Part shown: positions 26,028 to 64,000 of the stretch, in pieces
How the letters are laid out: each line of letters opens with the position of its first letter
Numbering within the stretch: the stretch's first letter is position 1
Assembly: GCA_002269645.1 (NCBI GenBank)
Contig: NIVC01000513.1
Span: 494,416-558,415 of the forward strand
Direction: 5' to 3'
Source of the DNA: Macrostomum lignano
Lineage: Eukaryota
Length of the DNA: 64,000 bases
Translations under genes and position numbers: made by a program
The notes under the pieces: model-generated
The model's database searches: none
What the model saw: the letters and a program-made list of their open reading frames with translations, nothing else
What the model was told of the DNA's origin: nothing

Positions 26028-27569
<1,542 letters not shown>

Positions 27570-37119: not shown

Positions 37120-37685
37120 GTATGGCGCGCAGTCTCGGCTGGTTGCAGCCTGGTTCTCTGGTTGCAGCCGTTTCTGTGGCCGGAGACGGGCTGACCATTG
37201 AATTAGGACTATTTTCCTGAGATCAGAAGCTTTTCGTTTGCTTTTCATAATCTGAGTGTGTTTGTCTAACTGTAGCATTTGCCGCTAATGTACAGAATAC
37301 TGCCAGTAGTTAAAAGCATAACATCCTTCGTAGCCACTATAAATGCAATAAGGTTCACTCTAGGAAACTTTCGGTTAGTTAATTTACCTTAGTGTCAGGT
37401 ATTACACTCTTATAAGTCATTGGCGAGAAGTTTCAACAATCAGCAGTTCAGCAGAGTCAGAGTAAGTTGTCGCAAAAGCTCAGGTTTTGGCAACTGTTTT
37501 CTTTCGTCGCATATTCAGTAGTCTTCTTATTGGGATATTGGCTTTACTCGTGGTCGCTGGTTCATATTTACACTTTGTAAAGTTTTACGCATGTCCGGTG
37601 TTTCCTGGGCTTTTTTCATCCGCTGCCAATACCCTGTTTAGTGTTCATATCTCCTCACTTCTCTCTTCGCACCCAACGGTTTCAG

Positions 37686-40076: not shown

Positions 40077-40786
40077 GTAGGGTGTTGAGTGAATACTGCT
40101 AATTGTTACCATTCACAACAGCGAGAAACCGTTTGAACATAAATCAAATTTTCTATCAAACATCATTTGAATCATTTTAGGGCTACTATTACTACGTAGG
40201 TGTCAGGTTCTTTCCCTTTTTGTCATGTGATTGCTACCAGTACTGAGCATGCTATTTATAAACTGCTCAATTACGTCGTAACTCCACGATCGATTGGAGA
40301 ATTATTTATCTCTTTAGATAATTTCGGCTCATCCACAAATGATTAATTTATACGAAAAAATATAGCCAATATTTGCACCATTCTCTTTAACTTCAAAGTC
40401 AAAATGTATGTTAAATTGCAAAATAATAACTAAATAAAGCACGAATATGTATTTAGCAAGTTCTCACAAAATAGCTCGTAGGAGATGCTTTTGTTATCTA
40501 ATGCATTGCGAATTTATCAGAATGCACCATGACAATGACAAAAGACAAAACAAAACTGTTAAAAGTTACAAGCAGTTCTACAGATACGTAGTTAGAAGCT
40601 TGCATCATATTGGAGTGAACCCTAGCAATAGCCGAGTAAGTAGCAAAATTCAATTTAAAAAGTGTCTCGATCATATCTTAGGAGCTATGTGAGAAAGTAG
40701 AGCTAGGTTGCACACATTTCAAGACTTTTCGGCCATTTCAAGCCAATATTGCCTCAATGATCCATTAAATTGACGAACGAACCCAG

Positions 40787-43700: not shown

Positions 43701-46700
43701 AACAACAGCCAACTACAGGTCTCGCTGGATCAGAACAGCAGCCAACTACAGGCCTCGCTGGATCAGAGCAGCAGCCAACTACAGGCCTTGCTGGATCAGA
43801 ACAACAGCCAACTACAGGCCTTACTGAATCTGAGCAACAGCCAACTACAGACCTTGCTGGATCAGAACAACAGCCAACTACAGGTCTCGCTGGATCAAAA
43901 CAGCAGCCAACTACAGGCCTCGCTGGATCGGAGCAGCAGCCAATTACAGGTCTTGCTGGATCAGAACAGCAGCAGCAGCCAACTACAGGCCTTGCTGGAT
44001 CAGAACAGCAGCCAACTACAGGCCTTACTGAATCTGAGCAACAGCCAACTACAGGCCTTGCTGGATCAGAACAGCAGCCAACTACAGGCCTCGCTGGATT
44101 AAAACAACAGCCAACTACAGACCTTGCTGGATCAGAACAGCAGCCAACTACAGGTCTCGCTGGATCAGAACAGCAGCCAACTACAGGCCTCGCTGGATCA
44201 GAGCAGCAGCCAATTACAGGTCTTGCTGAATCAGAACAGCAGCAGCAGCCAACTACAGGCCTTGCTGGATCAGAACAGCAGCCAACTACAGGCCTTGCTG
44301 GATCAGAACAGCAGCCAACTACAGGCCTTGCTGGATCAGAGCAAAAGCCAACTACAGACCTCGCTGAATTAGAAAAACAGCAGCAGCCAACTGCAGGCCT
44401 CGCTGGATCAGAGCAACAGCCAACTACAGGCCACGCTGGATCAGAAAAACAGCAGCAGCCAACTACAGGCCACGCTGGAACAGAACAGCAGCCAATTACA
44501 GGTCTTACTGGATCAGAACAGCAGCCAACTACAGGCCTTGCTGGATCAGAACAACAGCCATCTACAGGCCTTGCTAGATCAGAACAGCAGCCAACTACAG
44601 GCCTCGCTGGATCAGAACGACAGCCTTCAACAGGCCTTGCTGGATCGGAGCAACGGCAGCAGCCAACTACAGGCCTTGCTGGATCAGAACAACAGCCAAC
44701 TACAGGCTTTTCTGGATCAGAACAGCAGCCAATTACAGGTCTTGCTGGATCAGAACGACAGCCTTCAAAAGGCTTCACTGGATCAGAACAGCAGCCAAGT
44801 ACAGGCCTTGCTGGATCAGAAAAGCAGCCAACTACAGGCCTTGCTGGATCAGAGCAGCAGCCAACTACAAAGCTCGCTGGATCAGAGCAACAGCAACAGC
44901 CAACTACAGGCGTCCCTGGATCGGAACAACAGCCAACTACAGGCCTTGCTGGATCAGAACAGCAGCCAATTACAGGTCTTGCTGGATCAGAACAGCAGCA
45001 GCAGCCAACTACAGGCCTTGCTGGATCGAAACAGCAGCCAACTACAGGCCTTGCTGGATCAGAACAACAGCCAACTACAGGCCTCGCTGGATCAGAACAA
45101 CAGCAGCAGCCAACTACAGGCCTTGCTGGATCAGAACAACAGCCATCTACAGGCCTTGCTAGATCAGAACAGCAGCCAACTACAGGCCTCGCTGGATCAG
45201 AACGACAGCCTTCAACAGGCCTTGCTGGATCGGAGCAACGGCAGCAGCCAACTACAGACCTTGCTGGATCAGAACAACAGCCAACTACAGGCTTTTCTGG
45301 ATCAGAACAGCAGCCAATTACAGGTCTTGCTAAATCAGAACGACAGCCTTCAAAAGGCCTCGCTGGATCAGAGCAACAGCCAACTACAGGCCACGCTGGA
45401 TCAGAAAAACAGCAGCAGCCAACTACAGGCCTTGCTGGCTCAGAACAACAGCCATCCACAGGCTTAGCTGGATCCGAGGAGCAGCCAGCTACAGGCGTCG
45501 CTGGATCAGATCAGCAGCTAACTACAGACCTTGCTGGATCAGAACAGCAGCCAACTACAGGCTTCGCTGGATCAGAACAGCAGCCAACTACAGGCCTTGC
45601 TGGATCAGAACAACAGCCAACTACAGGCCTTGCTGAATCAGAACAACAGCCAACTACAGGTCTTGCTGGATCAGAACAGCAGCAGCAGCAAACTACAGGC
45701 CTTGCTGGATCAGAACAGCAGCCAACTACAGGCCTCGCTGAATCAGAGGAACAGCCATCTACAGGCCTCGCAGGATCAGAGGAACAGCCAGCTACAGGCG
45801 TCGCTGGATCAGAACAGCAGCCAACTACAGGCCTCGCTGGATCAGAACAACAGAAGCAGTCAACTACAGGCCTCGCTGGATCAGAACGACAGCCTTCAAC
45901 AGGCCTCGCTGGATCTGAGCAACGGCAGCAGCCAACTACAGGCCTTGCTGGATCAGAACAGCAGCCAATTACAGGTCTTGCTGGATCAGAACAGCAGCAG
46001 CAGCCAACTACAGGCCTTGCTGGATCAGAACAGCAGCCAACTATAGGCGTCGCTGGATCAGAGGAACAGCAAACTACAGGCGTCGCTGGATCAGATCAGC
46101 AGCCAACTACAGGCCTCGCTGGATCAGAGGAACAGCAAACTACAGGCGTCGCTGGATCAGATCAGCAGCTAACTACAGACCTTGCTGGATCAGAACAACA
46201 GCCAACTACAGGCTTTTCTGGATTAGAACAGCAGCCAACTACAGGCGTCGCTGAATCAAAACAACAGCCAACTACAAGTCTTGCTGGATCAGAACAGCAG
46301 CAGCAGCAAACTACAAGCCTTGCTGGATCAGAGGAACAGCCAGCTACAGGCCTCGCAGGATCAGAGGAACAGCCAGCTACAGGCGTCGCTGGATCAGAAC
46401 AGCAGCCAACTACAGGCCTTGCTAGATCAGAACAGCAGCCAACTTCAGGCCTTGCTGGATCAGAAAAGCAGCCAACTACAGGCCTTGCTGGATCAGAACA
46501 GCAGCAGCAGCCAACTACAGGCCTTGCTGGATCAGAACAGCAGCAGCAGCCAACTACAGACCTTGCTGGATCAGAACAACAGCCAACTACAGGCTTTTCT
46601 GGATCAGAACAGCAGCCAATTACAGGTCTTGCTGGATCAGAACGACAGCCTTCAAAAGGCTTCACTGGATCAGAACAGCAGCCAAGTACAGGCCTTGCTG

Positions 46701-49700
46701 GATCAGAAAAGCAGCCAACTACAGGCCTTGCTGGATCAGAGCAGCAGCCAACTACAAAGCTCGCTGGATCAGAGCAACAGCAACAGCCAACTACAGGCGT
46801 CCCTGGATCGGAACAACAGCCAACTACAGGCCTTGCTGGATCAGAACAGCAGCCAATTACAGGTCTTGCTGGATCAGAACAGCAGCAGCAGCCAACTACA
46901 GGCCTTGCTGGATCGAAACAGCAGCCAACTACAGGGCTTGCTGGATCAGAACAACAGCCAACTACAGGCCTCGCTGGATCAGAACAACAGCAGCAGCCAA
47001 CTACAGGTCTCGCTGGATCAGAACGACAGCCTTCAACAGGCCTGGCTGGATCGGAGCAACGGCAGCAGCCAACTACAGACCTTGCTGGATCAGAACAACA
47101 GCCAACTACAGGCTTTTCTGGATCAGAACAGCAGCCAATTACAGGTCTTGCTAAATCAGAACGACAGCCTTCAAAAGGCTTCACTGGATCTGAGCAACAG
47201 CCAACTACAGGCCTCGCTGGATCAGAGGAACAGCAAAATACTGGCCTCGCTGGATCAGAGCAACAGCCAACTACAGGCCACGCTGGATCACAGCAACAGC
47301 CAACTACAGGCCTCGTTGGATCAGAACAACGGCCAACTAGAAGTCTCACTGGATCTGAGCAACAGCCAACTACCGGCGTCGCTGGATCAGAGCATAAGCC
47401 AACTACAGGTCTTGCTGGATCAGAAAAGCAGCCAACTACAGGCATTGCTGGATCAGAACAGCAGCCAAGTACAGGCCTTGCTGGATCAGAAAAGCAGCCA
47501 ACTACAGGCCTTGCTGGATCAGAACAGCAGCCAACTACAAAGCTCGCTGGATCAGAGCAACAGCAACAGCCAACTACAGGCGTCCCTGGATCGGAACAAC
47601 AGCCAACTACAGGCCTTGCTGGATCAGAACAGCAGCCAATTACAGGTCTTGCTGGATCAGAACAGCAGCAGCAGCAAACTACAGGCCTTGCTGGATCAGA
47701 ACAGCAGCCAATTCCAGGTCTTACTGGATCAGAACAGCAGCAGCAGCCAACTACAGGCCTTGCTGGATCAGAACAACAGCAGCAGCCAACTACAGGCCTC
47801 GCTGGATCAGAGCAACAGCAACAGCCAACTACAGGCGTCCCTGGATCGGAACAACAGCCAACTACAGGCCTTGCTGGATCAGAACAACAGCCAACTACAG
47901 GCCTCGCTGGATCAGAACAACAGCAGCAGCCAACTACAGGTCTCGCTGGATCAGAACGACAGCCTTCAACAGGCCTGGCTGGATCGGAGCAACGGCAGCA
48001 GCCAACTACAGACCTTGCTGGATCAGAACAACAGCCAACTACAGGCTTTTCTGGATCAGAACAGCAGCCAACTACAGGTCTCGCTGGATCAGAACGACAG
48101 CCTTCAACTGGCCTCGCTGGATCTAAGCAACGGCAGCAGCCAACTACAGGCCTTGCTGGATCAGAACAACAGTCAACTACAGGCTTTTCTGGATTAGAAC
48201 AGCAGCCAACTACAGGCGTCGCTGGATCAGAACAGCAGCCAACTACAGGCCTTGCTGGATCAGAACAGCAGCCAACTACAGGCCTTGCTGGATCAGAGCA
48301 AAAGCCAACTACAGACCTCGCTGAATTAGAAAAACAGCAGCAGCCAACTGCAGGACTCGCTGGATCAGAGCAACAGCCAACTACAGGCCACGCTGGATCA
48401 GAAAAACAGCAGCAGCCAACTACAGGCCTTGCTGGCTCAGAACAACAGCCATCCACAGGCTTAGCTGGATCCGAGGAGCAGCCAGCTACAGGCGTCGCTG
48501 GATCAGATCAGCAGCTAACTACAGACCTTGCTGGATCAGAACAGCAGCCAACTACAGGCTTCGCTGGATCAGAACAGCAGCCAACTACAGGCCTTGCTGG
48601 ATCAGAACAACAGCCAACTACAGGCCTTGCTGAATCAGAACAACAGCCAACTACAGGTCTTGCTGGATCAGAACAGCAGCAGCAGCAAACTACAGGCCTT
48701 GCTGGATCAGAACAGCAGCCAACTACAGGCCTCGCTGAATCAGAGGAACAGCCATCTACAGGCCTCGCAGGATCAGAGGAACAGCCAGCTACAGGCGTCG
48801 CTGGATCAGAACAGCAGCCAACTACAGGCCTCGCTGGATCAGAACAACAGAAGCAGTCAACTACAGGCCTCGCTGGATCAGAACGACAGCCTTCAACAGG
48901 CCTCGCTGGATCTGAGCAACGGCAGCAGCCAACTACAGGCCTTGCTGGATCAGAACAGCAGCCAATTACAGGTCTTGCTGGATCAGAACAGCAGCAACAG
49001 CCAACTACAGGCCTCGTTGGATCAGAACAACGGCCAACTAGAAGTCTCACTGGATCTGAGCAACAGCCAACTACCGGCGTCGCTGGATCAGAGCATAAGC
49101 CAACTACAGGTCTTGCTGGATCAGAAAAGCAGCCAACTACAGGCATTGCTGGATCAGAACAGCAGCTAACTACAGACCTTGCTGGATCAGAACAGCAGCC
49201 AACTACAGGCTTCGCTGGATCAGAACAGCAGCCAACTACAGGCCTTGCTGGATCAGAACAACAGCCAACTACAGGCCTTGCTGAATCAGAACAACAGCCA
49301 ACTACAGGTCTTGCTGGATCAGAACAGCAGCAGCAGCAAACTACAGGCCTTGCTGGATCAGAACAGCAGCCAACTACAGGCCTCGCTGAATCAGAGGAAC
49401 AGCCATCTACAGGCCTCGCAGGATCAGAGGAACAGCCAGCTACAGGCGTCGCTGGATCAGAACAGCAGCCAACTACAGGCCTCGCTGGATCAGAACAACA
49501 GAAGCAGTCAACTACAGGCCTCGCTGGATCAGAACGACAGCCTTCAACAGGCCTCGCTGGATCTGAGCAACGGCAGCAGCCAACTACAGGCCTTGCTGGA
49601 TCAGAACAGCAGCCAATTACAGGTCTTGCTGGATCAGAACAGCAGCAACAGCCAACTACAGGCCTCGTTGGATCAGAACAACGGCCAACTAGAAGTCTCA

Positions 49701-52700
49701 CTGGATCTGAGCAACAGCCAACTACCGGCGTCGCTGGATTAGAGCATAAGCCAACTACAGGTCTTGCTGGATCAGAAAAGCAGCCAACTACAGGCATTGC
49801 TGGATCAGAACAGCAGCCAAGTACAGGCCTTGCTGGATCAGAAAAGCAGCCAACTACAGGCCTTGCTGGATCAGAACAGCAGCCAACTACAAAGCTCGCT
49901 GGATCAGAGCAACAGCAACAGCCAACTACAGGCGTCCCTGGATCGGAACAACAGCCAACTACAGGCCTTGCTGGATCAGAACAGCAGCCAACTACAGGCC
50001 TTGCTGGATCAGAACAACAGCAGCAGCCAACTACAGGCCTTGCTGGATCAGAACAACAGCCATCTACAGGCCTTGCTAGATCAGAACAGCAGCCAACTAC
50101 AGGCCTCGCTGGATCAGAACGACAGCCTTCAACAGGCCTTGCTGGATCGGAGCAACGGCAGCAGCCAACTACAGACCTTGCTGGATCAGAACAACAGCCA
50201 ACTACAGGCTTTTCTGGATCAGAACAGCAGCCAATTACAGGTCTTGCTGGATCAGAACGACAGCCTTCAAAAGGCTTCACTGGATCAGAACAGCAGCCAA
50301 GTACAGGCCTTGCTGGATCAGAAAAGCAGCCAACTACAGGCCTTGCTGGATCAGAGCAGCAGCCAACTACAAAGCTCGCTGGATCAGAGCAACAGCAACA
50401 GCCAACTACAGGCGTCCCTGGATCGGAACAACAGCCAACTACAGGCCTTGCTGGATCAGAACAGCAGCCAATTACAGGTCTTGCTGGATCAGAACAGCAG
50501 CAGCAGCCAACTACAGGCCTTGCTGGATCGAAACAGCAGCCAACTACAGGGCTTGCTGGATCAGAACAACAGCCAACTACAGGCCTCGCTGGATCAGAAC
50601 AACAGCAGCAGCCAACTACAGGTCTCGCTGGATCAGAACGACAGCCTTCAACAGGCCTGGCTGGATCGGAGCAACGGCAGCAGCCAACTACAGACCTTGC
50701 TGGATCAGAACAACAGCCAACTACAGGCTTTTCTGGATCAGAACAGCAGCCAATTACAGGTCTTGCTAAATCAGAACGACAGCCTTCAAAAGGCTTCACT
50801 GGATCTGAGCAACAGCCAACTACAGGCCTCGCTGGATCAGAGGAACAGCAAAATACTGGCCTCGCTGGATCAGAGCAACAGCCAACTACAGGCCACGCTG
50901 GATCACAGCAACAGCCAACTACAGGCCTCGTTGGATCAGAACAACGGCCAACTAGAAGTCTCACTGGATCTGAGCAACAGCCAACTACCGGCGTCGCTGG
51001 ATCAGAGCATAAGCCAACTACAGGTCTTGCTGGATCAGAAAAGCAGCCAACTACAGGCATTGCTGGATCAGAACAGCAGCCAAGTACAGGCCTTGCTGGA
51101 TCAGAAAAGCAGCCAACTACAGGCCTTGCTGGATCAGAACAGCAGCCAACTACAAAGCTCGCTGGATCAGAGCAACAGCAACAGCCAACTACAGGCGTCC
51201 CTGGATCGGAACAACAGCCAACTACAGGCCTTGCTGGATCAGAACAGCAGCCAATTACAGGTCTTGCTGGATCAGAACAGCAGCAGCAGCAAACTACAGG
51301 CCTTGCTGGATCAGAACAGCAGCCAATTCCAGGTCTTACTGGATCAGAACAGCAGCAGCAGCCAACTACAGGCCTTGCTGGATCAGAACAACAGCAGCAG
51401 CCAACTACAGGCCTCGCTGGATCAGAACAACAGCAGCAGCCAACTACAGGCCTTGCTGGATCGAAACAGCAGCCAACTACAGGCCTTGCTGGATCAGAAC
51501 AACAGCCAACTACAGGCCTCGCTGGATCAGAACAACAGCAGCAGCCAACTACAGGTCTCGCTGGATCAGAACGACAGCCTTCAACAGGCCTGGCTGGATC
51601 GGAGCAACGGCAGCAGCCAACTACAGACCTTGCTGGATCAGAACAACAGCCAACTACAGGCTTTTCTGGATCAGAACAGCAGCCAACTACAGGTCTCGCT
51701 GGATCAGAACGACAGCCTTCAACTGGCCTCGCTGGATCTGAGCAACGGCAGCAGCCAACTACAGGCCTTGCTGGATCAGAACAACAGTCAACTACAGGCT
51801 TTTCTGGATTAGAACAGCAGCCAACTACAGGCGTCGCTGGATCAGAACAGCAGCCAACTACAGGCCTTGCTGGATCAGAACAGCAGCCAACTACAGGCCT
51901 TGCTGGATCAGAGCAAAAGCCAACTACAGACCTCGCTGAATTAGAAAAACAGCAGCAGCCAACTGCAGGACTCGCTGGATCAGAGCAACAGCCAACTACA
52001 GGCCACGCTGGATCAGAAAAACAGCAGCAGCCAACTACAGGCCTTGCTGGCTCAGAACAACAGCCATCCACAGGCTTAGCTGGATCCGAGGAGCAGCCAG
52101 CTACAGGCGTCGCTGGATCAGATCAGCAGCTAACTACAGACCTTGCTGGATCAGAACAGCAGCCAACTACAGGCTTCGCTGGATCAGAACAGCAGCCAAC
52201 TACAGGCCTTGCTGGATCAGAACAACAGCCAACTACAGGCCTTGCTGAATCAGAACAACAGCCAACTACAGGTCTTGCTGGATCAGAACAGCAGCAGCAG
52301 CAAACTACAGGCCTTGCTGGATCAGAACAGCAGCCAACTACAGGCCTCGCTGAATCAGAGGAACAGCCATCTACAGGCCTCGCAGGATCAGAGGAACAGC
52401 CAGCTACAGGCGTCGCTGGATCAGAACAGCAGCCAACTACAGGCCTCGCTGGATCAGAACAACAGAAGCAGTCAACTACAGGCCTCGCTGGATCAGAACG
52501 ACAGCCTTCAACAGGCCTCGCTGGATCTGAGCAACGGCAGCAGCCAACTACAGGCCTTGCTGGATCAGAACAGCAGCCAATTACAGGTCTTGCTGGATCA
52601 GAACAGCAGCAGCAGCCAACTACAGGCCTTGCTGGATCAGAACAGCAGCCAACTATAGGCGTCGCTGGATCAGAGGAACAGCAAACTACAGGCGTCGCTG

Positions 52701-54157
52701 GATCAGATCAGCAGCCAACTACAGGCCTCGCTGGATCAGAGGAACAGCAAACTACAGGCGTCGCTGGATCAGATCAGCAGCTAACTACAGACCTTGCTGG
52801 ATCAGAACAACAGCCAACTACAGGCTTTTCTGGATTAGAACAGCAGCCAACTACAGGCGTCGCTGAATCAAAACAACAGCCAACTACAAGTCTTGCTGGA
52901 TCAGAACAGCAGCAGCAGCAAACTACAAGCCTTGCTGGATCAGAGGAACAGCCAGCTACAGGCCTCGCAGGATCAGAGGAACAGCCAGCTACAGGCGTCG
53001 CTGGATCAGAACAGCAGCCAACTACAGGCCTTGCTAGATCAGAACAGCAGCCAACTTCAGGCCTTGCTGGATCAGAAAAGCAGCCAACTACAGGCCTTGC
53101 TGGATCAGAACAGCAGCAGCAGCCAACTACAGGCCTTGCTGGATCAGAACAGCAGCAGCAGCCAACTACAGGCCTTGCTGGATCAGAACAACAGCAGCAG
53201 CCAACTACAGGCCTTGCTGGATCAGAACAGCAGCCAATTACAGGTCTTGCTGGATCAGAACAGCAGCAGCAGCCAACTACAGGCCTTGCTGGATCAGAAC
53301 AGCAGCCAACTAAAGGCGTCGCTGGATCAGAGGAACAGCAAGCAACAGGCGTCGCTGGATCAGATCAGCAGCTAACTATAGACCTTGCTGGATCAGAACA
53401 GCAGCTAACTACAGGCGTCGCAGGATCAGAACAGCAGCCAACTGCAGGCCTTGCTGGATCAGAAAAACAGCAGCAGCCAACTACAGGCCTCGCTGGATCA
53501 GAACAGCAGCACCAACCTTTAATAGGCCTACCTGGATCAGCATCGATGTCAACTATAGATCCTTCTGGATCAGTGAAGCAGCCAAGTCTTTCTAAATCAA
53601 AGCATGAAGAACCAACCGTCATCTCAGTTTCTGATCATCTCCTACAAACTGGTTCTGGCCAATTGGAATTGCAGCCGTCTGATTTGGAGCTGCAGCCATC
53701 AGTGCATTCAGTTGGAGCTGAGCCAGCAATATTGAGCGGTGATTCGGATGTTCAACAGAGAAACGATCAAAGCGTCGCGGATCCAAAGCTTTCATCGACA
53801 GCCGTACACGATCCGGTGGAACAACCTGCCTTCCCTACGCGATCTGTGGAATCTCATCAGCTGGTCGAGGAACAAGCAATCCCATGCTTTAGCGGTATCG
53901 ATAAAGAGAAACCTGCAGATAGTGCTGGTGAGCCTTTCTTAAAGCATGCCAACGATTTTTCATCGGACAAGGACACATCGGGTCAAGCAGCAGATTCAAC
54001 AGAACAGACTGTTGCAGAACTGAATGGCCCGGACTTGGCTGAGGGGGTATCCAGTGGTAAACCAGCGGCGGGAAGCATCCCAGAGCTGTCTCTGGGTGCC
54101 GCGGGTCAGTCTGAACTCGCCGTCAAAGACGCGCTGCAAGTGAGCAGTCCAAATCAG
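40787..54157 (+). CDS. Giant phase-0 exon (13,371 nt, 4457 codons): plectin repeats, then a giant low-complexity repeat
   Basis: cccag|GTT CCC (purine-rich acceptor, weaker) ... AAT CAG|gttggt; uninterrupted ORF; plectin-like SGARLSLSQAVRRGLI and LVNPANGRPISLAEAVQLGLI. Confidence 0.85.
42731..53515 (+). repeat. Coding 33/39-bp tandem repeat PTTGLAGSEQQ(QQ), roughly 300-320 units, with higher-order duplications
   Basis: Unit ccaactacaggccttgctggatcagaacagcag; copy number is estimated from length, not counted. Confidence 0.97.
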
Positions 54158-54668
54158 GTTGGTAAAATAGTCTTTTTTGAAAAAAAAGTTGCGCAAGAGT
54201 GTCGCTGATTTTCGCTTGGCTTACGTAGTGGACATAACTTAGGAAACAAAATTGGACCTAATATTTGAAATTTAACAGCCACTTGATTGATTAAAGTTTT
54301 TGATTGCGATTTTTACTATAAATCAGCTACCAGATCTCGTGATCACCTCAGTCACACATCCGATTATCGAGTGGACCGCACGGAGTGTGAATAATAACGA
54401 AGCTTTGATCGCTGTAGCTAAAGAACGCTTGGCCAGCAAATTATTTTTGTCATTTTTTTTCTAAAACCAATGCGCGAACATACGCTAAATTTCTGGCCAT
54501 AGCGAAAATACGTCTTAGGGATTGCATTGCAGCTGCTGATCAGTATTTTCTAATGCTTCTTTTACAGTTTTACCTTGCAATATTACTTGCGCAACTATTT
54601 TTGTTTTGTTGCTTTCTCAAACATAACAAATCTAACACTTTTCCTTTTTTGTTCGGCCACCCATGCAG

Positions 54669-57600
54669 ACCTCGAGCTTCCAAACCCCTAACCAAAGCTC
54701 TAACCAACATGCTCAGCCCCAGAATGCTGGTAGTCATTTAGTCTCTGGCTTGCAGACTAAGCCTAACTCGCTCGGTCAGTCGGCTTCTCCATCAGGCCTG
54801 TCGAGCGCGGACGTGGATTTTGAGAAGCAGCAAGGCTTAGAAGAAGCTGTGGATAAGGCTTTTGATGCCATTCAGTCAGGTCGTGAACGCGTCTCTATCG
54901 AGCGCAGTCTGCCCAAGAAACATGACGACGACCCAGATTTCAATTCTCAGCAGTCCGAAGCTGATGACCACGAAATCGTGGACATCTCAGTAAGTTCAGA
55001 CGCTTCGAGCGTCTGCTTTGAGGACGTCATTCACGGTCAGCAGATTGAGCTAGACGTTTCCATGCTGGTAGAGTTAGAAGATGAAGTGGTTGAGGCTTGC
55101 ACCTCTGGTGCGTCGTATGCTGAGCCAGTGCAGGCGAACAGACACGTGGTTCAGGAGGTGCCAGTGCAGCTGGCAGCGGCTGTCAGCTATCCTGTGCTGT
55201 CTAAAGCAAAGATTTCAGACCATGTTGTTCTTGAGGGCGCTGGTGTGACTAATGCCGAGCTTGGAGACAGATCAAGCCGTCCGGAGTCAGCAGACATCGA
55301 TAGCTCGAAATTTATTCTGAACTCAAAAACTGCTGAACATGAAGTGTCGCCATCTACGACTACGATAAAAGAGCAGCCTTGCGATACAAGCGACTCGCTG
55401 GATCAACTAACGGATCAAGAAATGGGCAGCATTCTGCCTGGAGAGTCTCTGTTCCTTCCCTCCGAAGCTGTCAGCTCACTGCCGGTTGGTAAACGCAAGC
55501 TGCCTGACAGTCTGGAGTTCGAGCCTGATAAAGGCGTTAGCGACACGGAGTATCGTTTGAAACGACCTTTTTCCGAAACAGAGATGTTAGCCAACACGGA
55601 GAGGCGCGAATCTGTTCTTAAACAAGAGCAGCAAACTCGAAAGTCGATTCCAGCTGCTGAGAGTTTGAGTGAAAATAAAGACTCAATTAAGCTTGTGAGC
55701 GCATTGAAAGATGAGAACGAGAGCACCACGGAAACACAGCCAAGCAGAATAACCAAATCCCAAAGCTCGAATGACACTGAGAAACCTACCATAAAAGCTG
55801 TTAAAGGTGTCGAGAAAATTGTACACTCCGAGTTTCAAGTTCTCGCTGTGCAGCTTCGTACGGAGTCTGCAAGCCTGAAAGATCAGCCTTATGAATCTGA
55901 TGACAACTTGGTGCCCACCACCAGGACCGGCAAGCTAGAGCGCTATGAAGACCAATCGGTCAGTTCCAACGCTTCGGAAGAAATCCTTCATAACCAAGCT
56001 GAACCCGCCGAGAAGTATCTCGATGTCGAGCCTTCTCTACACCCGGACTCCACAAAGCCTCACGAATCCGCAGACAGAGATGATTTGATGAAGAATAAGC
56101 CTGACAGGCCGAATTTTGCGGCCAATGATGGCGAGAATGCCCAAACAGCCGACTCAGAAAATTTATTAGATAATGCGCCCCGCCCATCAGCCAGCGAAGA
56201 AGAGCTGGTATCTTTTCTCGAAGAAATCCAGCAAAAAGTCAGAATGGACAACAAGAAAGAGATTAGAGAGGTGAGCGAAACTCCAATCGCTGATGATGAT
56301 GAATCTGCATCCGAATCGTCAATTGGTGCCAAATCTGAGAGAGACGCATTTGAACAGCGCAAGGACAAATTGGACGATGAGCTAAAATCAGGTGACGGTG
56401 GAAAGACCCTCGACTTTTGGGGTGACGAGGGCAAGGCCGAGAGGGTGAACGTTCAGGCATCATCACCGGCTGGATTGCAGGAGTTTCCTTCAAAGCTTAA
56501 TTCTCAGGACACAGATGAAAGTAACCAATTTGGCAAGGATTCAAAGGAATACCGCACACCTTCAGATGCTGCAGAAACTGATCGAGGCGCGAAATCATTT
56601 AGGAATGATCTGCCTGAAAATTTTCAGACTGTTGTTGATACGGAGACGGCCGTTCTTGCAGTACAGCTGCAGGCTGGTGAACCAATGCGCGAATATGACG
56701 ACGAGCAAATGTCAGTTTCTGATTCTGAAGAAGTCGAAGAGTTCATTTCAGTGGTAATTAAAAATCCAGCCGAACACTTCAAGCGCATGGCTTGGGAGGC
56801 ACAGACCACAGCCGATGACGTTCTTTGTTCAGGGGCAGAGCAATCTTCTCACTCTGATTGTATTCGCCAGCTCAGTGAGCAGGAAGACTCTGAACCAATT
56901 AGAAACCGGAATGAGGATGTCGATAAGCGCAAAGAAACTACAGAGAATGCCTTGGAGAGTGACATCAATGAGCCGACTGGTTTTGCTGCAGATTCTGGTG
57001 TCACTCAGTCAGCCGACGTCAAAGATGTTGAGCCGGACTCACAAAAGTTCAGTGGAAAGACTGACCAAATTTTACAGTCTAATCGACACCAGGATGAAGA
57101 GTCGGAAATCGCAGACGCTGCAGAGAAGCTGGGCGGTGACGCTGAACAGGAAGAGGAACTTGATCAAAACCGTCAACCATTCCAGGAATCTGGAAAAGTA
57201 CAGGAAAGTGAGCGAGCTGCTGAGAGTGCGATGGACGACGGCTCATCTATTCACAGTTCATCTAAAGATTCATCACTAATTGGCCCGCCTCATATCACCA
57301 GTGTTTCAGACACCCAGCAAGACGTGCATAAATCAACGCTAGATAATCACGAGCATCAGCCAATCGAAATGCGAACAACGGCCTCACAGTTTTATGCTAC
57401 TTTCCCGGATGATAAGGAAATTAGAAGCAAAGCAGAAGACAGAGCGCCTCTTCAGCGTGTTGCGGAGACGGAAACCTATGTCCTAGCTGTGCGACTGTGC
57501 AGGAATGATGAAAATCTTCTGTCTGGCTTTCCTGACCAGGCTTCTACCGAGCCAAATGAAACTGTGCCAGTTCCAGAGTCCCTTCGGCGCAATGATCTTT

Positions 57601-60600
57601 CGTCAAATCATTTTGAGCCGATTCCAAAGCAGAGCGGTGCAAATGAAGGAGAATCAGCTGGCAACAGTACCGAGGATTCCAAGAGAGGCGACTCTCCATC
57701 TGGTTTTCCAACCATCGGGATTGCGAAAAGTTTCGAAAGTACTACAGAAGCGGAAAGACCGTCTTCAAAACATCTTTCGAAATCATGTGAGCCGACTGAT
57801 CTGCTTAGCGAAGAATGTCTCAAGAAACACAGTCCCTCACGTCAGCAGATGCCAGGCTCCAAACACTTCCCGGAAACTGCTGTGGAGAAAATGAGCAAGC
57901 ATTCTGACGTCACAGCAGGACTAAAAGACGTAAATACTGTTTCTCAAACAACAGAGGAAAGTCAGTTTGACACTGAAGATATAGAAGCAAATGAGCCTGA
58001 GTGTGAGCCACTTGTACAAAGCAGTTTTGACTCGAGTCACGTGCTTGCAGCTCAGCTACGTCAGGAAGCTGACGATGATGACTACGACTCAGACTCCGGG
58101 TCAAGTCCTAGCGATGCTACAGTCATTCTCAAATCAAGCCAACAGGCACCTGACAAGGTGTATAAACTGACCGATTCAAAAGACAACAGCTTTGGGTCTG
58201 AACCAAGCCAGGAAGAGTTTAACTGTTCAAAACCGGACCATAGTGAGTCTGCTGGTGACCATAAGCTTGATTCCAACAGCGAATCTCTCAGCAAAAAATC
58301 AAGGCTAGAAAATCAACAGTTGACAGCTCGAGCTGACCTTGACCAACCTGCGTGTCGAGGTTTCAGTCCTGCGGATTCCGAGTTCTACCCAGACCTCCGG
58401 CCTAATGAAGTTGTGTCTAATGGAAAAGACATTCACTCGAATGACATGGCAGTCGTGCAACAAGAAGATTCTGAGGTCCCTATTTTAGGCACAAGTAACG
58501 AGAATTTACGACAAGTTGATTCGTTGAAGAATCTGCATCCCTCATCAAGCCGCAGCGAGCAGCCAGAAAGCGGAGTCAAGCTTGCAAGCAGAGAGGAACC
58601 GACAGCTGATAATCAGGAGTTCCCTGCAGTGGAAAAAGAATTTGAAACGATTTCGATTTCGCTCGAGCTCGATGAGCCCCAGAATGACAACCAACGATTA
58701 CGTCACGAAAGTTCGCTGAGTAATGCTGGAGGTGCTGAGGTTGAGTCTAAGGTGACAGAGAGCGAAATTATATCAATCTCGATGGAGCTGGATGAACCTG
58801 AAGAATTCCAAGACTACAGAATCGGTAGATCGTTGACATCCGATAGTCTGCAGAAAAGAAAACGACTTAACTCGTTTGGGACACTGGAAGAGACAAGGGA
58901 AATTTCCGAGGAAAGTCCCGATGTCCAGCGAGTCCATATGAAAATGGACATCGAACATCATGGGCTGGCTGTCACGCTTCGCGATGATAAGACAGACGAT
59001 GAGGAAAACGCGTTTGCAAAATGCCCCGAAAGCTCCAGCAAAGTAGTCGAAGGTCAGTCTGACGAATTAAGCTCTTGTGAAATCGCTGCTGACGATCTGA
59101 CAAGTGTTAAGCCCGAAGCTGAAGTGCATTTAGGTGAATTTGAAAAAGAAATAGATTTCGATTCGAATGAACAGCGGGAAGATTCACAATCTCTCGACAC
59201 TGCAACTGTGCCATCTGATGAAGATTTTGAGTCCTTGAAAAAGCCCGATAGCAGGTACAGTGACATCGAATCCCTCAGCATTTCCTTAGAGCCACCATTT
59301 GAAGAGGAAGAAACCGGCGAAGCAGGCTTGATTGAGGAGTTCCGAAGACCAGTTCTTGAAACTTCTGGGCTTGCAAATCGTACTTTTACGCTGGATACTG
59401 AGACAGTGGTGCTTGCTGTGTCGCTGCAAATACCTGATCAGTCAGCTGATGCCGAAAACGTTAGACAGCGTAGTGACAACCTACCGACACCAGAAGGCCT
59501 CGGCGAAGAAGCAACGGAAAAGACAACCAGTCTGGAGATTTCAATGCACCTTGATGATGACACAAACCCAGATGCAGATAGTTCAGCTAGTGATAAAGAC
59601 TTGATGTCGGTAGATCCAACAGCAGGCGATGCGTCCGTCACGTCAGTTACGCAGCCTATCAATATTAAGCATGAAAGTTTTGATGATTCAGGAAAAAGTA
59701 CGGATTCGCAAAATCAACTGCAGCCTCATCAGAACAGTCGCGAGCCTTCATTCAACCAGTCGGAAAGTGACTTCGAAGTACTTTTCGAGGAAGATAATGA
59801 GTCCATTGGTCGCAGAGGATCTAACCTTTCCCATCGAGATGCCACTTCCGGGTATAGGCATGACGTCGTAACGCCTCATGTGGTTGAACGAGAGACAGCT
59901 GTGTTGGAAGTTAAACTGAGAAGTTCTGGAAAGGACTCCCGAGATTCAGTTTGCTCGGTTCCAGACTCCAAGGGCACAGGTTTGAATGAGAACCCCTCTG
60001 AATCCGGACTTGAATCCGCAATCGAGCTGGAGAGAAGCTTTGAATCGCCAGTGGAAACTGAACTTGATGGTGCAAGTGTTGAGTTTGAGCAGTCTCTGCA
60101 CATCGATAGCCAAGCTGAGGCTTCAACTGAAAACGATGCAAATCAACCGATTTCATCCGATTTTCATTCAAAAGATAAATTAGGGAGCGATGAAAAAACA
60201 GTGGACGAACGCGATTTAAATTTAAAGAGGACTGATTTCGTGTGCGAAGTTAGGCGTGCAGCAAAGGATGCTATCAGGGTGATAAACTCAGAAACACTGG
60301 TGCTCGCAGTTCACCTCAGATGCGAGAGTGACATAAAGACAGCTGGATTTGCACCTAAACCGGAAGTTGCTGAACTAAACGAAGAACAAGTAGAACAGAT
60401 GGAGTTTGCAACAACAAAACAGTCTATGCCAACTCAGCATCCCATGGCTGTGACAGAAATCGAAATCAAGGCGGCCGAGCCGATGCGAATAACGCCTGAA
60501 CAGGAGTTCCATACCACTGGCCAACCAGAATCAGCGTTGCAATCTCCTCAGCATGGATATGCTTGTTCAACCGGACGAAAATACGAAGCTTCTGTCGACA

Positions 60601-61538
60601 ATATTAACATTCCAAGCGACAGTGAAACCATCGAAATGGTCGAAGAGGAGACAGAAGACGACTCTATTGGCAATTTCACGCCGCGCAGCGAAGATCTATC
60701 GATGTCGTTTCCACTGCCGAAGAAGTCTGCGAATCTGCCTCAGCAAAGACGATCGAACGCTGAGCAAGCTGAAGCGTCTCCAACGCTCGACGACACTTCG
60801 CTGATGTCTCTAGGATCAATGTCCATGGACATAGTGTACACATCGGATTATCCAGAGCCAGCGCTTGAGTCCCGAACATGCAAGTCACCGTTGCTAGATG
60901 ATCGAATCTCCTACGACGACAGCAGCCTTGCCAGTCCGTGCCGTGAAGACACGCATGTTGTTGTGGGCGGCAAGCCGCTGACATTCAAGGAAGCAATCGA
61001 GACGGGAGCTATTGATCCAAATGGTGTGACTCTGTCGCTGGAGTCGCCAATAGGCCGGCGAATTACACTTCAAGAAGCTATTGACGATCAGCTAGTGGAT
61101 CCAAACACTGGAGTGCTCCACGTACCACACGGGCCCGCCTATCCGCTCTCCATGGCCGCGCAGCTCGGCTTTCTTCACGGCATCGATCCTGCCTATCTGA
61201 TCGGCACACGAGGCTCGCTAGACAAAAACGACAGCAAAGAGCAGCAACCGGCGCTACCGTTGGATGAACCTTCGTCAGCCAGAACTTCAGTCGCCGTTGA
61301 TGAACCTCTCAGCATTGATGTCGAATGCTCAAATCAGTGCATGGGCGCCGATTCGCTTATGCCGAGCTTGACCGAGCGAGTTAGCAGCAGAGACCCTCCC
61401 CAAATCCCGCCCAGTCCCTCGATCCCCGATGACGGCGGCGACCGCAACCCGCCGCCGCCCGCTGTTGCCAGCAGCGAAGGCTGCGGCTTTGTTCACAGCG
61501 ACAACGACGCAAGAGACTTGGAGTCAGAAGACGCAGTG
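54669..61538 (+). CDS. Phase-0 exon (2290 codons): acidic Ser/Glu/Asp-rich region with dispersed motifs and a terminal plectin-repeat cluster
   Basis: catgcag|ACC TCG ... GCA GTG|gtatgc; PLTFKEAIETGAID..RRITLQEAIDDQLVDPNTG. Confidence 0.85.
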
Positions 61539-62502
61539 GTATGCATTTGTAGTCGGAGAAGAGTGATTGCTGTTGTGTACTCGTAGCTTTGTGCCGCTCT
61601 CTTGCTTGAGAAAAATCATTTATCCGATTCGCTTTGATTGTTGTCTGATGCCTCTCTAGAGTTTCAACGTTCCGTTTTTAGCCGCATTCTTGCATAGTGC
61701 TCTGCGCAAATTTCTCTACTTTCAATTTTGCTTTTTAATCGGTTACGGTTTCCTTTGATTAGGTGATTTAAGGAGCAGCAAAACTGCTTCTTGCTATTTT
61801 GAAGTTGCCACACCTGAGCTATAGAGCCCAGAGATGCCCTTAGGGTAGATCAGGATCTTAAAATGATTTTATGAAGGGACATAGATTTGGCAGTATGTCT
61901 TTCATTAGATGAAGAAATATAAAAATGCTTTATTGATTTTATTCCCGTAGTTTCAATTAAAATGATGCAGTAAAAAGTGTCAAATTTCTCTCTGCTTTCT
62001 CGCCATAGTCGGTGATCATCTGGCGCGTGGATCATTTGAACGAAGTACGTGATTTGAAAAGTTCTAAAATCCTGTTTGGTGAATGGTCTGAAAGAAATGC
62101 TTGATGAATTCGATTAATGATTTAGGACTGGTTGAGGTGTTCCTTGCTAATTTATGTGTGGTGCCTGTTCGAGACGCGACCGAATCAAACTGGAAAGTCG
62201 AACTGCTACGACGGGATATTTCGACGCGCGAAAATTAATTGATATCTGTAATTCTATTGGTATTGGTATTTTGCTTCCGACGACTCGATTTTATTTTGGC
62301 CATGCAAATTTCTACGCTTCTCTCGTTTTTGCCTATTAATTCCTTACTATTTGCTTCTTAGCTTTAGACCTTGGAATTTTTGCTGTTTAAACGTTCCTAT
62401 CAGTTCAAACCCTTCGCTGATCGGTGTTGGCTGAAGTTTTCTCCCCACAGGGGGCGACTGGCACCTCACTGACCGATCGCTCCGCTCATCTTCAATCCTT
62501 AG

Positions 62503-63071: not shown

Positions 63072-64000
63072 ACTTGGCAAGATCGCATTGACAGGCGCTT
63101 GTCGGAAATTGAAAGCGCGTCTCAGTCATCAGAACAGGCGGCAACAGTCGCAGCTGCACTGACTGACCCAGCCGAACTGCAGAGTTTAATAAACGAGCTG
63201 AGGGCCTTCGAAGGCGAGCTGAGCGCCCACCAAGGCGACCTGAAGGCGCTCTCGTCCGCTGGCCACAAGCTCATACACTGCCTGCGCGCCACCGACCAGA
63301 CACAGGAGGCGTTCGCTTCTGCACGGCATCGCGAATTCACGGGCGCCTCCGGTTCCTGTGAGACCGACATTCGAAAGGCTGCCGGTGCGGCTTCCGATCG
63401 TCAGGAGTCGCTGGCTGTCCGCTGCCGCGACCTGATGCAGCGGCTCAACGCAGCGGCCAATCAGAGACGCGAGTTTCGCTGAACTGTTGCGCCAAACCGA
63501 TTCGCAGTTGTGCGCGACTGAATCGCAGCTGGCGAAGCTCGAGGGACAGCAACCGACAAGCGACATTCAGCTCAACGCGTTAGCTGACAAGGCCCAGGGC
63601 CTCAGTGCAGATCTGTTCTCACTCGATGGAAGCATCGAAAAATTGCGAGCCGCTTCCGCGGCACTCGCAGCATCAGCTCTTGAGAATGCCGCGTCACCGG
63701 AGGCTAAGACTGAGCAGCAGCGGCAGGCCGAAGCGGCTGCCGCTCGTCATGAGGAACTGAAAAGCCGCTGCGCAGATCTTAGTGGCCGACTGCAGCAGCA
63801 GGCCTGGCAGCTGGAAGCCTTCTGGACACTCTAAATGGTTTAAGACAGTGGCTAGACGGTACCAATAGGAAACTTTTGGCCATGCGGTCTGTTAGCCTGC
63901 GCCCAGAGCTACTTGAGGAGCAGAGCCGTCAGATTAAGGTGCTTGAACGCTGACCTGCAGTGCCGGCGTACTTCGCTCGAGCAAGCCAGCGAGAGCCTTG
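63072..64000 (+). CDS. Spectrin-repeat exon running off the window, with 2-3 single-base frameshifts
   Basis: cttacag|TWQDRIDRRLSEIE...; helical spectrin-like sequence continues in shifted frames (LRQWLDGTNRKL). Confidence 0.78.

What the first reader, a model, noticed from the sequence alone, without database searches (positions are those of the whole stretch)
55815..60320. Novel dispersed motif (V/I)x(S/T)ETxVLAVxL repeated eight times in an acidic disordered exon
The copies are IVHSEFQVLAVQL (~55820), VVDTETAVLAVQL (~56635), VAETETYVLAVRL (~57460), SFDSSHVLAAQL (~58025), MDIEHHGLAVTL (~58945), TLDTETVVLAVSL (~59390), VVERETAVLEVKL (~59880) and VINSETLVLAVHL (~60280). Codons and spacers (about 130-310 aa) are diverged while the hydrophobic pattern is kept, which indicates protein-level selection rather than DNA slippage. 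It looks like a multivalent beta-strand docking motif; I cannot assign it to a known family.
Basis: seen in the sequence. Interest (0 to 1): 0.7.

Follow-up and report, generated by a model that had tools for sequence, protein, structure and literature searches.

The report
Repeated short motif in flatworm spectraplakin
A 17-residue hydrophobic motif recurs eight times in a long, acidic, unstructured exon of the giant cytoskeletal linker (spectraplakin) gene of the flatworm Macrostomum lignano. It is real, is kept at the protein level and matches nothing described, but its binding partner and function are unknown.

Summary
All eight copies are in one reading frame at the stated coordinates, and shuffling the exon never produced comparable counts (8 observed against 0.04 expected, 0 of 20,000 shuffles). 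Codons differ between copies and no DNA repeat covers them.

The exon (54669-61538, 2,290 aa) belongs to the Macrostomum lignano spectraplakin gene (PAA81789.1, annotated only as hypothetical). It lies between degenerate plakin repeats and the spectrin rod. It is acidic (about 22% D+E) and AlphaFold2 gives it low confidence and no secondary structure, which fits disorder.

The motif is longer than reported: Φ-x-x-Φ-Φ-[DEN]-[ST]-E-T-x-V-L-A-V-x-L-[RQ]. The copies are among the highest hydrophobic peaks of the exon. AlphaFold2 models the motif with neither helix nor hairpin.

An exhaustive profile search of 1.84 billion proteins, a PDB search and Pfam found no relative outside M. lignano. The LC8 motif is excluded because no copy has the anchor Gln. 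A plakin-repeat relic is not supported by three profile tests. The SUMO-interacting-motif core fits 6 of 8 copies, but that consensus is degenerate.

Best reading: a lineage-specific, multivalent linear docking or sticker motif in a disordered spacer, with the partner unknown. Conservation in other species could not be tested. Interest is moderate to low.

The parts
54669..61538 (+). Acidic, Ser-rich exon 'D' (2,290 aa) of the Macrostomum lignano spectraplakin gene. It carries all eight motif copies.
   Evidence: The acceptor is CAG|ACC at 54668/54669 and the donor is GTG|GTATGC at 61538/61539. The translation is found exactly in PAA81789.1 (P0006) at aa 2987-5276, joined upstream to ...ARSIDNQ and downstream to IDAKKMAEDLL.... 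AF2 gave pLDDT 35.7. dN/dS against the 97%-identical second copy L001 is 0.565 and indels are in frame.
55809..55859 (+). Motif copy 1: VEKIVHSEFQVLAVQLR
56622..56672 (+). Motif copy 2: FQTVVDTETAVLAVQLQ (closest to the consensus)
57450..57500 (+). Motif copy 3: LQRVAETETYVLAVRLC
58011..58061 (+). Motif copy 4 (degenerate): LVQSSFDSSHVLAAQLR. The second genomic copy reads SFDSESHVLAAQL.
58932..58982 (+). Motif copy 5 (degenerate): VHMKMDIEHHGLAVTLR
59379..59429 (+). Motif copy 6: RTFTLDTETVVLAVSLQ
59871..59921 (+). Motif copy 7: TPHVVERETAVLEVKLR
60270..60320 (+). Motif copy 8: AIRVINSETLVLAVHLR, preceded by the only helix AF2 predicted in the region
58647..58679 (+). Second, alternating amphipathic element, TISISLELDEP. 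It may be a diverged relative of the motif.
   Evidence: The pattern [IL][SE]IS[LM].[LP] occurs 4 times against 0.003 expected.
58767..58799 (+). Second element, copy 2: IISISMELDEP
59271..59303 (+). Second element, copy 3: SLSISLEPPFE
59526..59558 (+). Second element, copy 4: TSLEISMHLDD
60969..61208 (+). Three short plakin-type repeats at the C-terminal end of the same exon (ORF aa 2103-2182). They are context for the plakin-relic rival.
   Evidence: (an HMM built from the gene's own repeats, which include these three, scores 14-21 bits here and nothing at the motif sites)
54166..54668 (+). Intron between the giant tandem-repeat ORF (40853-54208) and exon D
   Evidence: GT...CAG boundaries in phase 0. 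The acceptor is confirmed by P0006, which joins exon B directly to exon D.

Best explanation
The eight copies are a lineage-specific short linear motif: Φ-x-x-Φ-Φ-[DEN]-[ST]-E-T-x-V-L-A-V-x-L-[RQ]. It sits at 133-307-aa intervals in a 2,290-aa polyanionic, intrinsically disordered exon of the Macrostomum lignano spectraplakin (the MACF1/dystonin/Shot type). That exon lies between the degenerate plakin-repeat region and the spectrin rod.

Shown:
- The motif is non-random.
- It is conserved at the amino-acid level but not the nucleotide level.
- The copies are among the main hydrophobic islands of an otherwise acidic, low-confidence (disordered) sequence.
- It has no detectable relative in the searched collections.

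Inferred:
- Each copy acts as a molecular recognition element that is extended when free and becomes ordered only on binding. It would insert the V-L-A-V-x-L segment into a hydrophobic groove, or add it as a strand to a folded partner domain. E(-4) and R/Q(+5) would set the register.
- Eight copies on one chain would make the giant isoform a multivalent scaffold for that still unknown partner. The acidic spacers would keep the hydrophobic sites soluble and exposed.
- Conservation is residue-specific (Leu never replaced at two positions, Val in 7 of 8 copies at two positions, Ala in 7 of 8 at one). This argues for stereospecific recognition rather than generic hydrophobicity.
For: - Copies verified in frame, with 0 of 20,000 shuffles reaching the observed counts.
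- Exactly 8 copies in the window and in the 5,543-aa protein.
- Codons differ and no DNA repeat joins the copies.
- Flanks of ±110 aa show no convincing similarity (mean z about 0.6; the best alignments are compositional).
- Column conservation runs from -11 to +5, with invariant L(0) and L(+4) and 7 of 8 for E(-4), V(-1), A(+1) and V(+2).
- Seven copies rank 1, 3, 4, 6, 16, 21 and 25 among the 7-residue hydropathy peaks of the ORF. Peak 12 lies just upstream of copy 7.
- AF2 on 821 aa gave pLDDT 35.7 and essentially no secondary structure.
- AF2 on the 38-mer, with the copies as its alignment, gave pLDDT 79-85 over the motif. DSSP assigned neither helix nor strand pairing, which means an extended, partnerless segment.
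- The exon is part of an annotated gene model with confirmed splice junctions. It stays open, with in-frame indels and dN/dS 0.565, in a second genomic copy.
- In that second copy the only changes inside the motifs are at variable or conservatively hydrophobic positions.
Against: - No partner is known and no binding test was possible.
- Cross-species conservation is untested. Only a 96%-identical M. lignano copy exists in the collections, and 3 changes in the motifs against about 5 expected is not significant.
- AF2 with a shallow alignment of paralogous copies is weak evidence for conformation.
- Four contiguous conserved residues (VLAV) do not show the simple alternation expected of a one-faced edge strand.
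- dN/dS of 0.565 shows that the exon as a whole is only weakly constrained.
Confidence: 0.45

Rival explanations
1. Self-association stickers. The copies bind each other, or the ISISLELD-type elements, within or between molecules. This would form reversible beta contacts that compact or cross-link the acidic spacer and open under load, as sacrificial bonds in a mechanical linker.
For: - The hexapeptide VLAVxL is strongly hydrophobic and beta-prone and is flanked by charged 'gatekeeper' residues.
- The same exon holds four alternating amphipathic elements, ISISLELD-like, that score next best against the motif profile.
- Mutual recognition would also explain why all copies keep the same residues.
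- The gene is a mechanical cytoskeletal linker.
Against: - AF2 predicted no pairing among the five motif copies and four ISIS elements present in the 821-aa segment. That prediction is of low reliability.
- The high net negative charge of the spacers opposes association.
- There is no experimental handle.
Confidence: 0.2
2. Relics of degenerate plakin (plectin) repeats. The motif would be what remains of the beta-hairpin ΦΦ-D-P-x-T-G-x-Φ-x-Φ of repeats that once filled this exon. In Drosophila Shot, plakin repeats are likewise dispersed with gaps in one giant exon.
For: - The gene's own hairpins QLVDPNTGVLHVPH (exon D aa 2141) and GLVDETSGLLVLPL (exon A aa 390) resemble VVDTETAVLAVQL in register. 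They rank about 23rd and 30th of 5,847 positions in a profile scan.
- The exon ends with three recognisable plakin-type repeats.
- Shot has 33 dispersed repeats with gaps in a 10.5-kb exon (PMC2173965).
- hhalign's single aligned column pairs the two Asp positions.
Against: - Pfam Plectin gives no hit anywhere in exon D at E<=0.1.
- An HMM built from 20 of the gene's own repeats finds nothing at any motif site, even at E<=10,000.
- hhalign of the motif profile against the repeat profile gives probability 0.2%.
- The A-Φ-x-x-G helix that precedes every true hairpin is absent upstream of the motifs.
- The resemblance was noticed before it was tested.
- The positions best conserved in the motif (E-T, VLAV, L) are not those conserved in plakin repeats.
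Confidence: 0.12
3. A cluster of SUMO-interacting motifs. The hhXh core (V-L-A/E-V), preceded by acidic and phosphorylatable residues, would bind the SUMO groove as an added beta-strand and give poly-SUMO avidity.
For: Six of 8 copies fit the hhXh/hXhh core, with D/E and S/T residues within 6 positions upstream. The consensus is as stated in PMC8616421.
Against: - The consensus is degenerate. The exon has 14 such cores in all against 18.3±4.5 in shuffles, so there is no enrichment.
- It does not explain the invariant L(+4), R/Q(+5), A(+1), E(-4) and T(-3).
- Copies 4 and 5 fail the core.
- There is no functional link between spectraplakin giant exons and SUMO that I know of (own knowledge).
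Confidence: 0.07
4. LC8 (DYNLL) binding sites, with T-E-T standing in for the TQT anchor, as in multivalent LC8 clients (ASCIZ, KANK1 linker).
For: - The architecture is that of a long disordered region with many short beta-forming motifs (PMC5963919 and PMC12803091, listed).
- Thr flanks a central residue in 5 of 8 copies.
Against: - Gln at position 0 is the one position without alternatives in 67 known motifs (PMC5746249).
- No copy has TQT or [TVI]Q[TV].
- The best-conserved part of the motif (VLAVxL) lies outside the 8-residue LC8 footprint.
- Spacings of 133-307 aa are far larger than in known multivalent clients (own knowledge).
Confidence: 0.02
5. Chance or a DNA-level artefact (slippage, minisatellite remnant, assembly duplication).
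For: The same gene contains very large DNA tandem arrays just upstream.
Against: - Shuffle tests.
- No DNA repeat at the motif sites.
- Different codons in each copy.
- All eight copies recur in an independent genomic copy from another contig.
Confidence: 0.01

Closest known systems
Multivalent LC8-binding disordered regions (ASCIZ, KANK1 L2 linker, Nup159)
   Same: A long intrinsically disordered chain carries many copies of a short motif that is extended or beta-forming and only orders on binding. Multivalency gives avidity and can stiffen the chain.
   Different: There is no Gln anchor in any of the 8 copies. The conserved core is a hydrophobic VLAVxL. Spacing is 133-307 aa rather than tens of residues. 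No LC8 link has been shown.
SUMO-interacting motif clusters (RNF4, PML/Daxx type)
   Same: An hhXh aliphatic core is preceded by acidic and Ser/Thr residues, and would bind as an added beta-strand. Six of 8 copies fit the loose consensus (PMC8616421).
   Different: Five further conserved positions are not part of any SIM definition. The exon is not enriched in SIM-like cores. The context is cytoskeletal.
Plakin (plectin) repeats, PF00681, dispersed in the giant exon of Drosophila Shot
   Same: The gene family and the position in the gene are the same, between the plakin domain and the spectrin rod. Repeats in Shot are dispersed with gaps (PMC2173965). The motif weakly resembles the ΦΦDPxTGxΦxΦ hairpin.
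   Different: Pfam, the own-repeat HMM and hhalign give no signal at the motif sites. The helical half of the repeat is missing. The spacers are acidic and disordered.
Stickers-and-spacers disordered regions of giant cytoskeletal proteins (e.g. titin PEVK/E-rich segment; own knowledge)
   Same: A giant mechanical linker contains a long charged disordered segment punctuated by short conserved elements.
   Different: There is no sequence relationship. The elements here are hydrophobic 17-mers rather than PPAK or poly-E modules.

Membership tests
Spectraplakin gene (context of the exon) | Calponin-homology actin-binding domain followed by plakin-domain spectrin-like repeats | tested here: met
   Pfam CH, Spectrin, Spectrin_3 and Spectrin_4 hits lie in ORFs 29033-30625 and 31946-32722, though several are below the curated cut-off. 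The full CH region is present in P0006.
Spectraplakin gene (context of the exon) | Plectin/plakin repeats between the plakin domain and the spectrin rod | tested here: met
   PF00681 scores E=6e-17 in ORF 34198-37194 and E=5.9e-10 in 40853-42400. Spectrin repeats lie downstream at 63099-63482 (E=1.8e-4, below cut-off).
Spectraplakin gene (context of the exon) | C-terminal EF-hand, GAR domain and SxIP microtubule-binding tail | not tested
   These lie outside the window. P0006 ends within the rod.
Plakin (plectin) repeat, PF00681 | Profile match to the roughly 38-aa hairpin plus two-helix unit at the motif sites | tested here: not met
   There is no Plectin hit in exon D at E<=0.1. The own-repeat HMM finds only aa 2103-2182. 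hhalign gives probability 0.2%.
LC8/DYNLL-binding motif | Gln at position 0 flanked by T/V/I(-1) and T/V(+1) (TQT anchor) | tested here: not met
   None of the 8 copies has TQT or [TVI]Q[TV]; Glu occupies that position in 7 of 8. The definition comes from PMC5746249.
SUMO-interacting motif | hhXh or hXhh aliphatic core flanked by acidic or phosphorylatable residues | tested here: inconclusive
   Six of 8 copies fit. Such cores are not enriched in the exon: 14 against 18.3±4.5. The consensus is degenerate (PMC8616421).
SUMO-interacting motif | Binding to the SUMO beta2/alpha1 groove | not testable with these tools
   No complex prediction or binding assay was available.
DNA tandem or dispersed repeat (slippage product) | Nucleotide-level similarity among copies | tested here: not met
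   The repeat finder and TRF find no family at the motif sites. Synonymous codons differ.
Short linear motif / MoRF in a disordered region (generic class) | A short conserved island in a region predicted to be disordered, with unconserved flanks | tested here: met
   AF2 gave pLDDT 35.7. Flanks are unrelated. The island is 17 columns long.
Short linear motif / MoRF in a disordered region (generic class) | Conservation across orthologues while the spacers diverge | not testable with these tools
   Only M. lignano sequences were retrieved. The 96%-identical copy is uninformative.
Other recalled SLiM classes (NES, LIR, clathrin box, dileucine, FFAT, B56 LxxIxE, PP1 RVxF, SxIP) | Regular expression of the class, written from memory | tested here: not met
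   Each pattern matches 0 or 1 of the 8 copies.

The most novel reading that the evidence does not exclude
The motif is a new, stereospecific, eight-fold docking site through which a flatworm-specific giant spectraplakin isoform recruits or polymerises a single partner along a disordered arm more than 2,000 aa long. Alternatively it zips onto itself as a load-sensitive set of sacrificial bonds. Either way it would be a previously undescribed interaction module invented inside the plakin-repeat exon of a spectraplakin.
Probability: 0.3. Interest if true: 0.55.

Novelty: new member of a known kind. Interest (0 to 1): 0.3.

Why it matters
Spectraplakins are conserved cytoskeletal integrators. What their giant plakin-repeat exons do outside vertebrates is poorly understood. 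If this motif is a true multivalent docking or self-association site, it shows how a lineage can turn that exon into a disordered scaffold with new binding specificity. It would also give a short, defined peptide handle for finding the partner in Macrostomum lignano, a flatworm in which RNAi and transgenesis work (own knowledge).

If the motif is not conserved in related species, it is one more lineage-specific oddity in a fast-evolving disordered region. Nothing here bears on a long-standing open question.

Tried and rejected
1. Homologue searches.
- The 1,600-aa motif region against 5.8 billion proteins returned only the 96%-identical M. lignano protein P0001.
- The plakin-repeat exon A returned only M. 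lignano proteins.
- A 401-aa query covering copies 6-8 returned nothing, not even P0001, so that negative says nothing.

2. Exhaustive profile search of 1.84 billion representatives with the eight-copy alignment. Besides P0001 there were two tandem-repeat proteins:
- P0002 lies in a phage-tail gene cluster of a bacterial contig.
- P0003 is a tandem-repeat protein of unknown source.
- Both reach significance only by summing six near-identical weak matches, so I rejected them as chance.

3. PDB profile search: 0 hits at E<=10.

4. Plakin-relic idea: hhalign and an own-repeat HMM were negative. Only a post-hoc rank test was suggestive.

5. Ancient long-repeat idea: Smith-Waterman comparison of ±110-aa flanks against shuffles gave mean z about 0.6. 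The best pair (z 4.7) is a compositional alignment.

6. Constraint test between the two genomic copies. There were 3 changes in 104 motif residues against 5 expected, exon dN/dS was 0.565, and introns are as diverged as the exon. The copies are too similar to be informative.

7. AF2 on 821 aa hoping to see strand pairing: none, and confidence was low.

8. Literature searches for Macrostomum with spectraplakin, for the locus tag, and for Macrostomum together with plakin-family names: nothing.

9. A panel of SLiM regexes written from memory: only the degenerate SIM core fits.

Full report
**What is in the window.** The window is eukaryotic. Its + strand from about 29 kb to the end carries a spectraplakin gene.

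In order, the gene shows:
- The end of a calponin-homology domain and plakin-domain spectrin-like repeats in ORFs 29033-30625 and 31946-32722. These are Pfam CH, Spectrin, Spectrin_3 and Spectrin_4 hits, several below the curated cut-off.
- Plectin repeats in 34198-37194 (PF00681, E=6e-17) and 40853-42400 (E=5.9e-10).
- Two large coding tandem arrays.
- The acidic ORF 54663-61586.
- Spectrin repeats from 63099.

The organism is Macrostomum lignano. The only database relatives are M. lignano proteins. The exon under study is contained residue for residue in PAA81789.1 / BOX15_Mlig013505g1 (P0006, 5,543 aa, 'hypothetical protein' or 'CH domain-containing protein') at aa 2987-5276.

That gene model fixes the exon borders:
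- The acceptor is CAG|ACC at 54669 (protein ...ARSIDNQ|TSSFQTPNQ...).
- The donor is GTG|GTATGC after 61538 (protein ...ESEDAV|IDAKKMAEDLL...).

A second genomic copy (L001, contig NIVC01000071.1) is 97.3% identical in DNA over 9.3 kb. It encodes P0001, which is 96% identical in protein.

**Checking the observation.** All eight peptides are present, in frame, at the coordinates given.
- In 20,000 residue shuffles of the ORF, the loose pattern [VGL]L[AE][AV].L occurred 0.043 times on average against 8 observed. The stricter patterns occurred essentially never, and no shuffle reached the observed counts.
- A profile built from the copies finds exactly eight sites in a six-frame translation of all 64 kb.
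- The regex finds exactly eight sites in the full-length protein, all in this exon.

The copies are not DNA repeats.
- Codons at the invariant residues differ from copy to copy. For example, the first invariant Leu is CTC, CTT, CTA, CTT, CTG, CTT, TTG and CTC.
- Neither repeat finder nor TRF reports a family that joins the sites.
- Flanking ±110 aa are not detectably related once the motif is masked. Mean z is about 0.6 and the best-scoring pairs are compositional alignments.

**Anatomy of the motif.** I aligned the copies on the first invariant Leu. The conserved block runs from -11 to +5:
- Φ at -11 (6 of 8 copies).
- Φ at -8 (5 of 8) and at -7 (7 of 8).
- D/E/N/H at -6.
- S/T at -5.
- E at -4 (7 of 8).
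- T at -3 (5 of 8).
- Variable at -2.
- V at -1 (7 of 8), L at 0 (8 of 8), A at +1 (7 of 8), V at +2 (7 of 8).
- Variable polar at +3.
- L at +4 (8 of 8).
- R/Q at +5 (7 of 8).

Copies 4 (VLAA) and 5 (GLAV) are the weakest. Start-to-start spacings are 271, 276, 187, 307, 149, 164 and 133 aa.

The exon is 13% Ser, 11.5% Glu and 9% Asp. Seven motif copies rank 1, 3, 4, 6, 16, 21 and 25 among its 7-residue hydropathy peaks. Peak 12 lies immediately upstream of copy 7.

The 20 residues upstream of the motif are somewhat enriched in Lys/Arg: 26 against 16.2±3.7, P about 0.009. This was a post-hoc test.

A second element of alternating hydrophobic and polar residues occurs four times in the C-terminal half of the exon: TISISLELDEP, IISISMELDEP, SLSISLEPP and SLEISMHLDD. 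The pattern is seen 4 times against 0.003 expected. Two of these are the best non-motif matches to the motif profile, so they may be diverged relatives.

**Structure.**
- AlphaFold2 on aa 1100-1920 (five motif copies) gave mean pLDDT 35.7. It predicted no secondary structure except one helix just upstream of copy 8. That fits disorder, with the caveat that the alignment had only two rows.
- I then used the eight copies, plus three variants from the second locus, as the alignment for a 38-mer. AF2 gave pLDDT 79-85 across the motif, but DSSP assigned neither helix nor strand pairing. The model is an extended segment without an intramolecular partner.
- On a helical wheel the hydrophobic residues would surround most of the helix, with a variable polar residue in their midst (my own reading).
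- Six of the eleven residues VVDTETAVLAV are beta-branched.

I therefore favour an extended, strand-like bound state. The evidence for this is weak.

**Is it something known?**
- Pfam finds nothing relevant in the exon.
- A profile search of all PDB sequences gives no hit at E<=10.
- An exhaustive HMMER search of 1.84 billion representative proteins finds only the M. lignano paralogue plus two tandem-repeat proteins. Those two reach significance by summing six near-identical weak matches. One lies in a bacterial phage-tail cluster. I treat both as chance.
- LC8 is excluded as a family assignment. In 67 known LC8 motifs, Gln at position 0 is the one position without alternatives (PMC5746249), and no copy has it.
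- The SUMO-interacting-motif consensus is hhXh or hXhh with an acidic flank (PMC8616421). It fits 6 of 8 copies. But the exon as a whole has no excess of such cores (14 against 18.3±4.5), and the consensus explains none of the other conserved positions.
- Eight further linear-motif classes, written from memory as regular expressions, match at most one copy each.

**The plakin-relic idea.** The exon sits where Drosophila Shot has its giant plakin-repeat exon, in which 33 repeats are dispersed with gaps (PMC2173965). It also ends with three short plakin-type repeats. I therefore asked whether the motif is the surviving hairpin of degenerate repeats.

Two of the gene's own hairpins, QLVDPNTGVLHVPH and GLVDETSGLLVLPL, do resemble VVDTETAVLAVQL in register. 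They rank about 23rd and 30th of 5,847 positions in a profile scan.

Three independent profile tests fail, however:
- Pfam Plectin.
- An HMM built from 20 of the gene's own repeats, which finds nothing at the motif sites even at E<=10,000.
- hhalign, at probability 0.2%.

The A-Φ-x-x-G helix that precedes every true hairpin is also missing. I keep this reading as a minor rival, about 0.12.

**Selection.** Between the two genomic copies the exon has dN/dS 0.565, in-frame indels only, and the same nucleotide divergence as the neighbouring introns. The 104 residues of the eight 13-mers carry 3 differences against about 5 expected. All three are at variable or conservatively hydrophobic positions. 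One of them (an inserted Glu in copy 4) brings that copy closer to the consensus. This agrees with constraint but is not significant. No orthologue from another species could be retrieved, so the decisive conservation test remains open.

**Most likely mechanism.**

Shown: an eight-fold, residue-specifically conserved, hydrophobic 17-mer embedded in a polyanionic sequence that is predicted to be disordered. The exon is part of an annotated gene model.

Inferred: each copy is a linear recognition element that orders on binding, most likely as an added strand or groove-bound extended peptide. The acidic spacers keep the sites soluble and exposed. The eight copies make the giant isoform a multivalent scaffold.

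Leu is never replaced at two positions, Val is kept in 7 of 8 copies at two positions, and Ala in 7 of 8 at one. This argues for a stereospecific partner surface. Mutual recognition between copies (the self-association sticker model) would give the same pattern and is the main rival.

I put about 0.45 on partner docking, 0.2 on self-association, 0.12 on plakin relic, 0.07 on SIM, and very little on LC8 or artefact.

**Verdict.** The finding is real and correctly described. The motif is new as a sequence, but in kind it is a repeated linear motif in a disordered region of a giant scaffold protein, so I rate it a new member of a known kind. It is confined to a fast-evolving exon of one flatworm lineage as far as the data go, and it has no partner or phenotype attached. 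Interest is therefore moderate to low (0.3). It would rise if the motif proves conserved across Macrostomum species or if a specific partner is found.

Noticed in passing
window 42734-53510 (within ORF 40853-54208): A 33-nt unit is repeated about 314 times, with a 138-nt higher-order period. It encodes about 3,500 aa of GLAGSEQQPTT-type repeats in an open 4,451-aa frame that begins with plakin repeats. The annotated protein P0006 skips this ORF and joins exon B directly to exon D. It is either an alternative giant exon or was missed by annotation.
   Followed up: partly
window 38223-39314 (ORF 37641-40088): A 36-nt tandem array of about 30 copies encodes QVDP(A/S)Q(S/P)GMSTQ inside spectraplakin exon B. 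It is included in the annotated protein P0006.
   Followed up: partly
window 58647-58679, 58767-58799, 59271-59303, 59526-59558: A second recurrent element, (I/L)S(I/L)S(L/M)ELDEP-like, forms a perfectly alternating amphipathic strand pattern. It occurs 4 times against 0.003 expected. It lies 36-116 aa upstream of motif copies 5-7 and scores next best against the main motif profile.
   Followed up: partly
window about 34800 (minus-strand ORF 34749-35489): The antisense frame of coding exon A reads ETGETVVLAVSC, which shares 8 residues with motif copy 6. It scores only 5 bits in the profile scan, lies opposite a coding exon, and is taken as coincidence.
   Followed up: partly
window 55749-55808 and the equivalent 20 aa upstream of each copy: Lys/Arg are enriched in the 20 residues upstream of the motif copies (26 against 16.2±3.7; post hoc), within an otherwise acidic exon. 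The sequence just downstream is acidic.
   Followed up: partly
window 7952-8296 (-) and 12523-13095 (-): Two unrelated neighbouring genes lie on the minus strand. One is an exon of a sodium:neurotransmitter symporter (PF00209, E=2e-29). The other is a SURF2-like ORF (PF05477, E=5.5e-13).
   Followed up: partly
window 1128-2631, 3085-5512, 9475-12091, 22588-23262, 25951-27669: Several large minisatellite or microsatellite blocks lie upstream of the gene. They give long spurious ORFs in several frames and strong GC skew. The last block is a GA/TC microsatellite of about 1.7 kb.
   Followed up: no
L002 3001-4545 (P0002): A 514-aa protein in a phage contractile-tail gene cluster of a bacterial contig carries six tandem copies of KVIESESLVLANQDLEEL in a Q/E-rich repeat. 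It superficially resembles the motif and is judged to be chance.
   Followed up: partly
tool behaviour: A 401-aa query from the exon failed to recover even the 96%-identical P0001 that the 1,600-aa query had found. Negatives from the word-indexed search are unreliable for short queries from this region.
   Followed up: no
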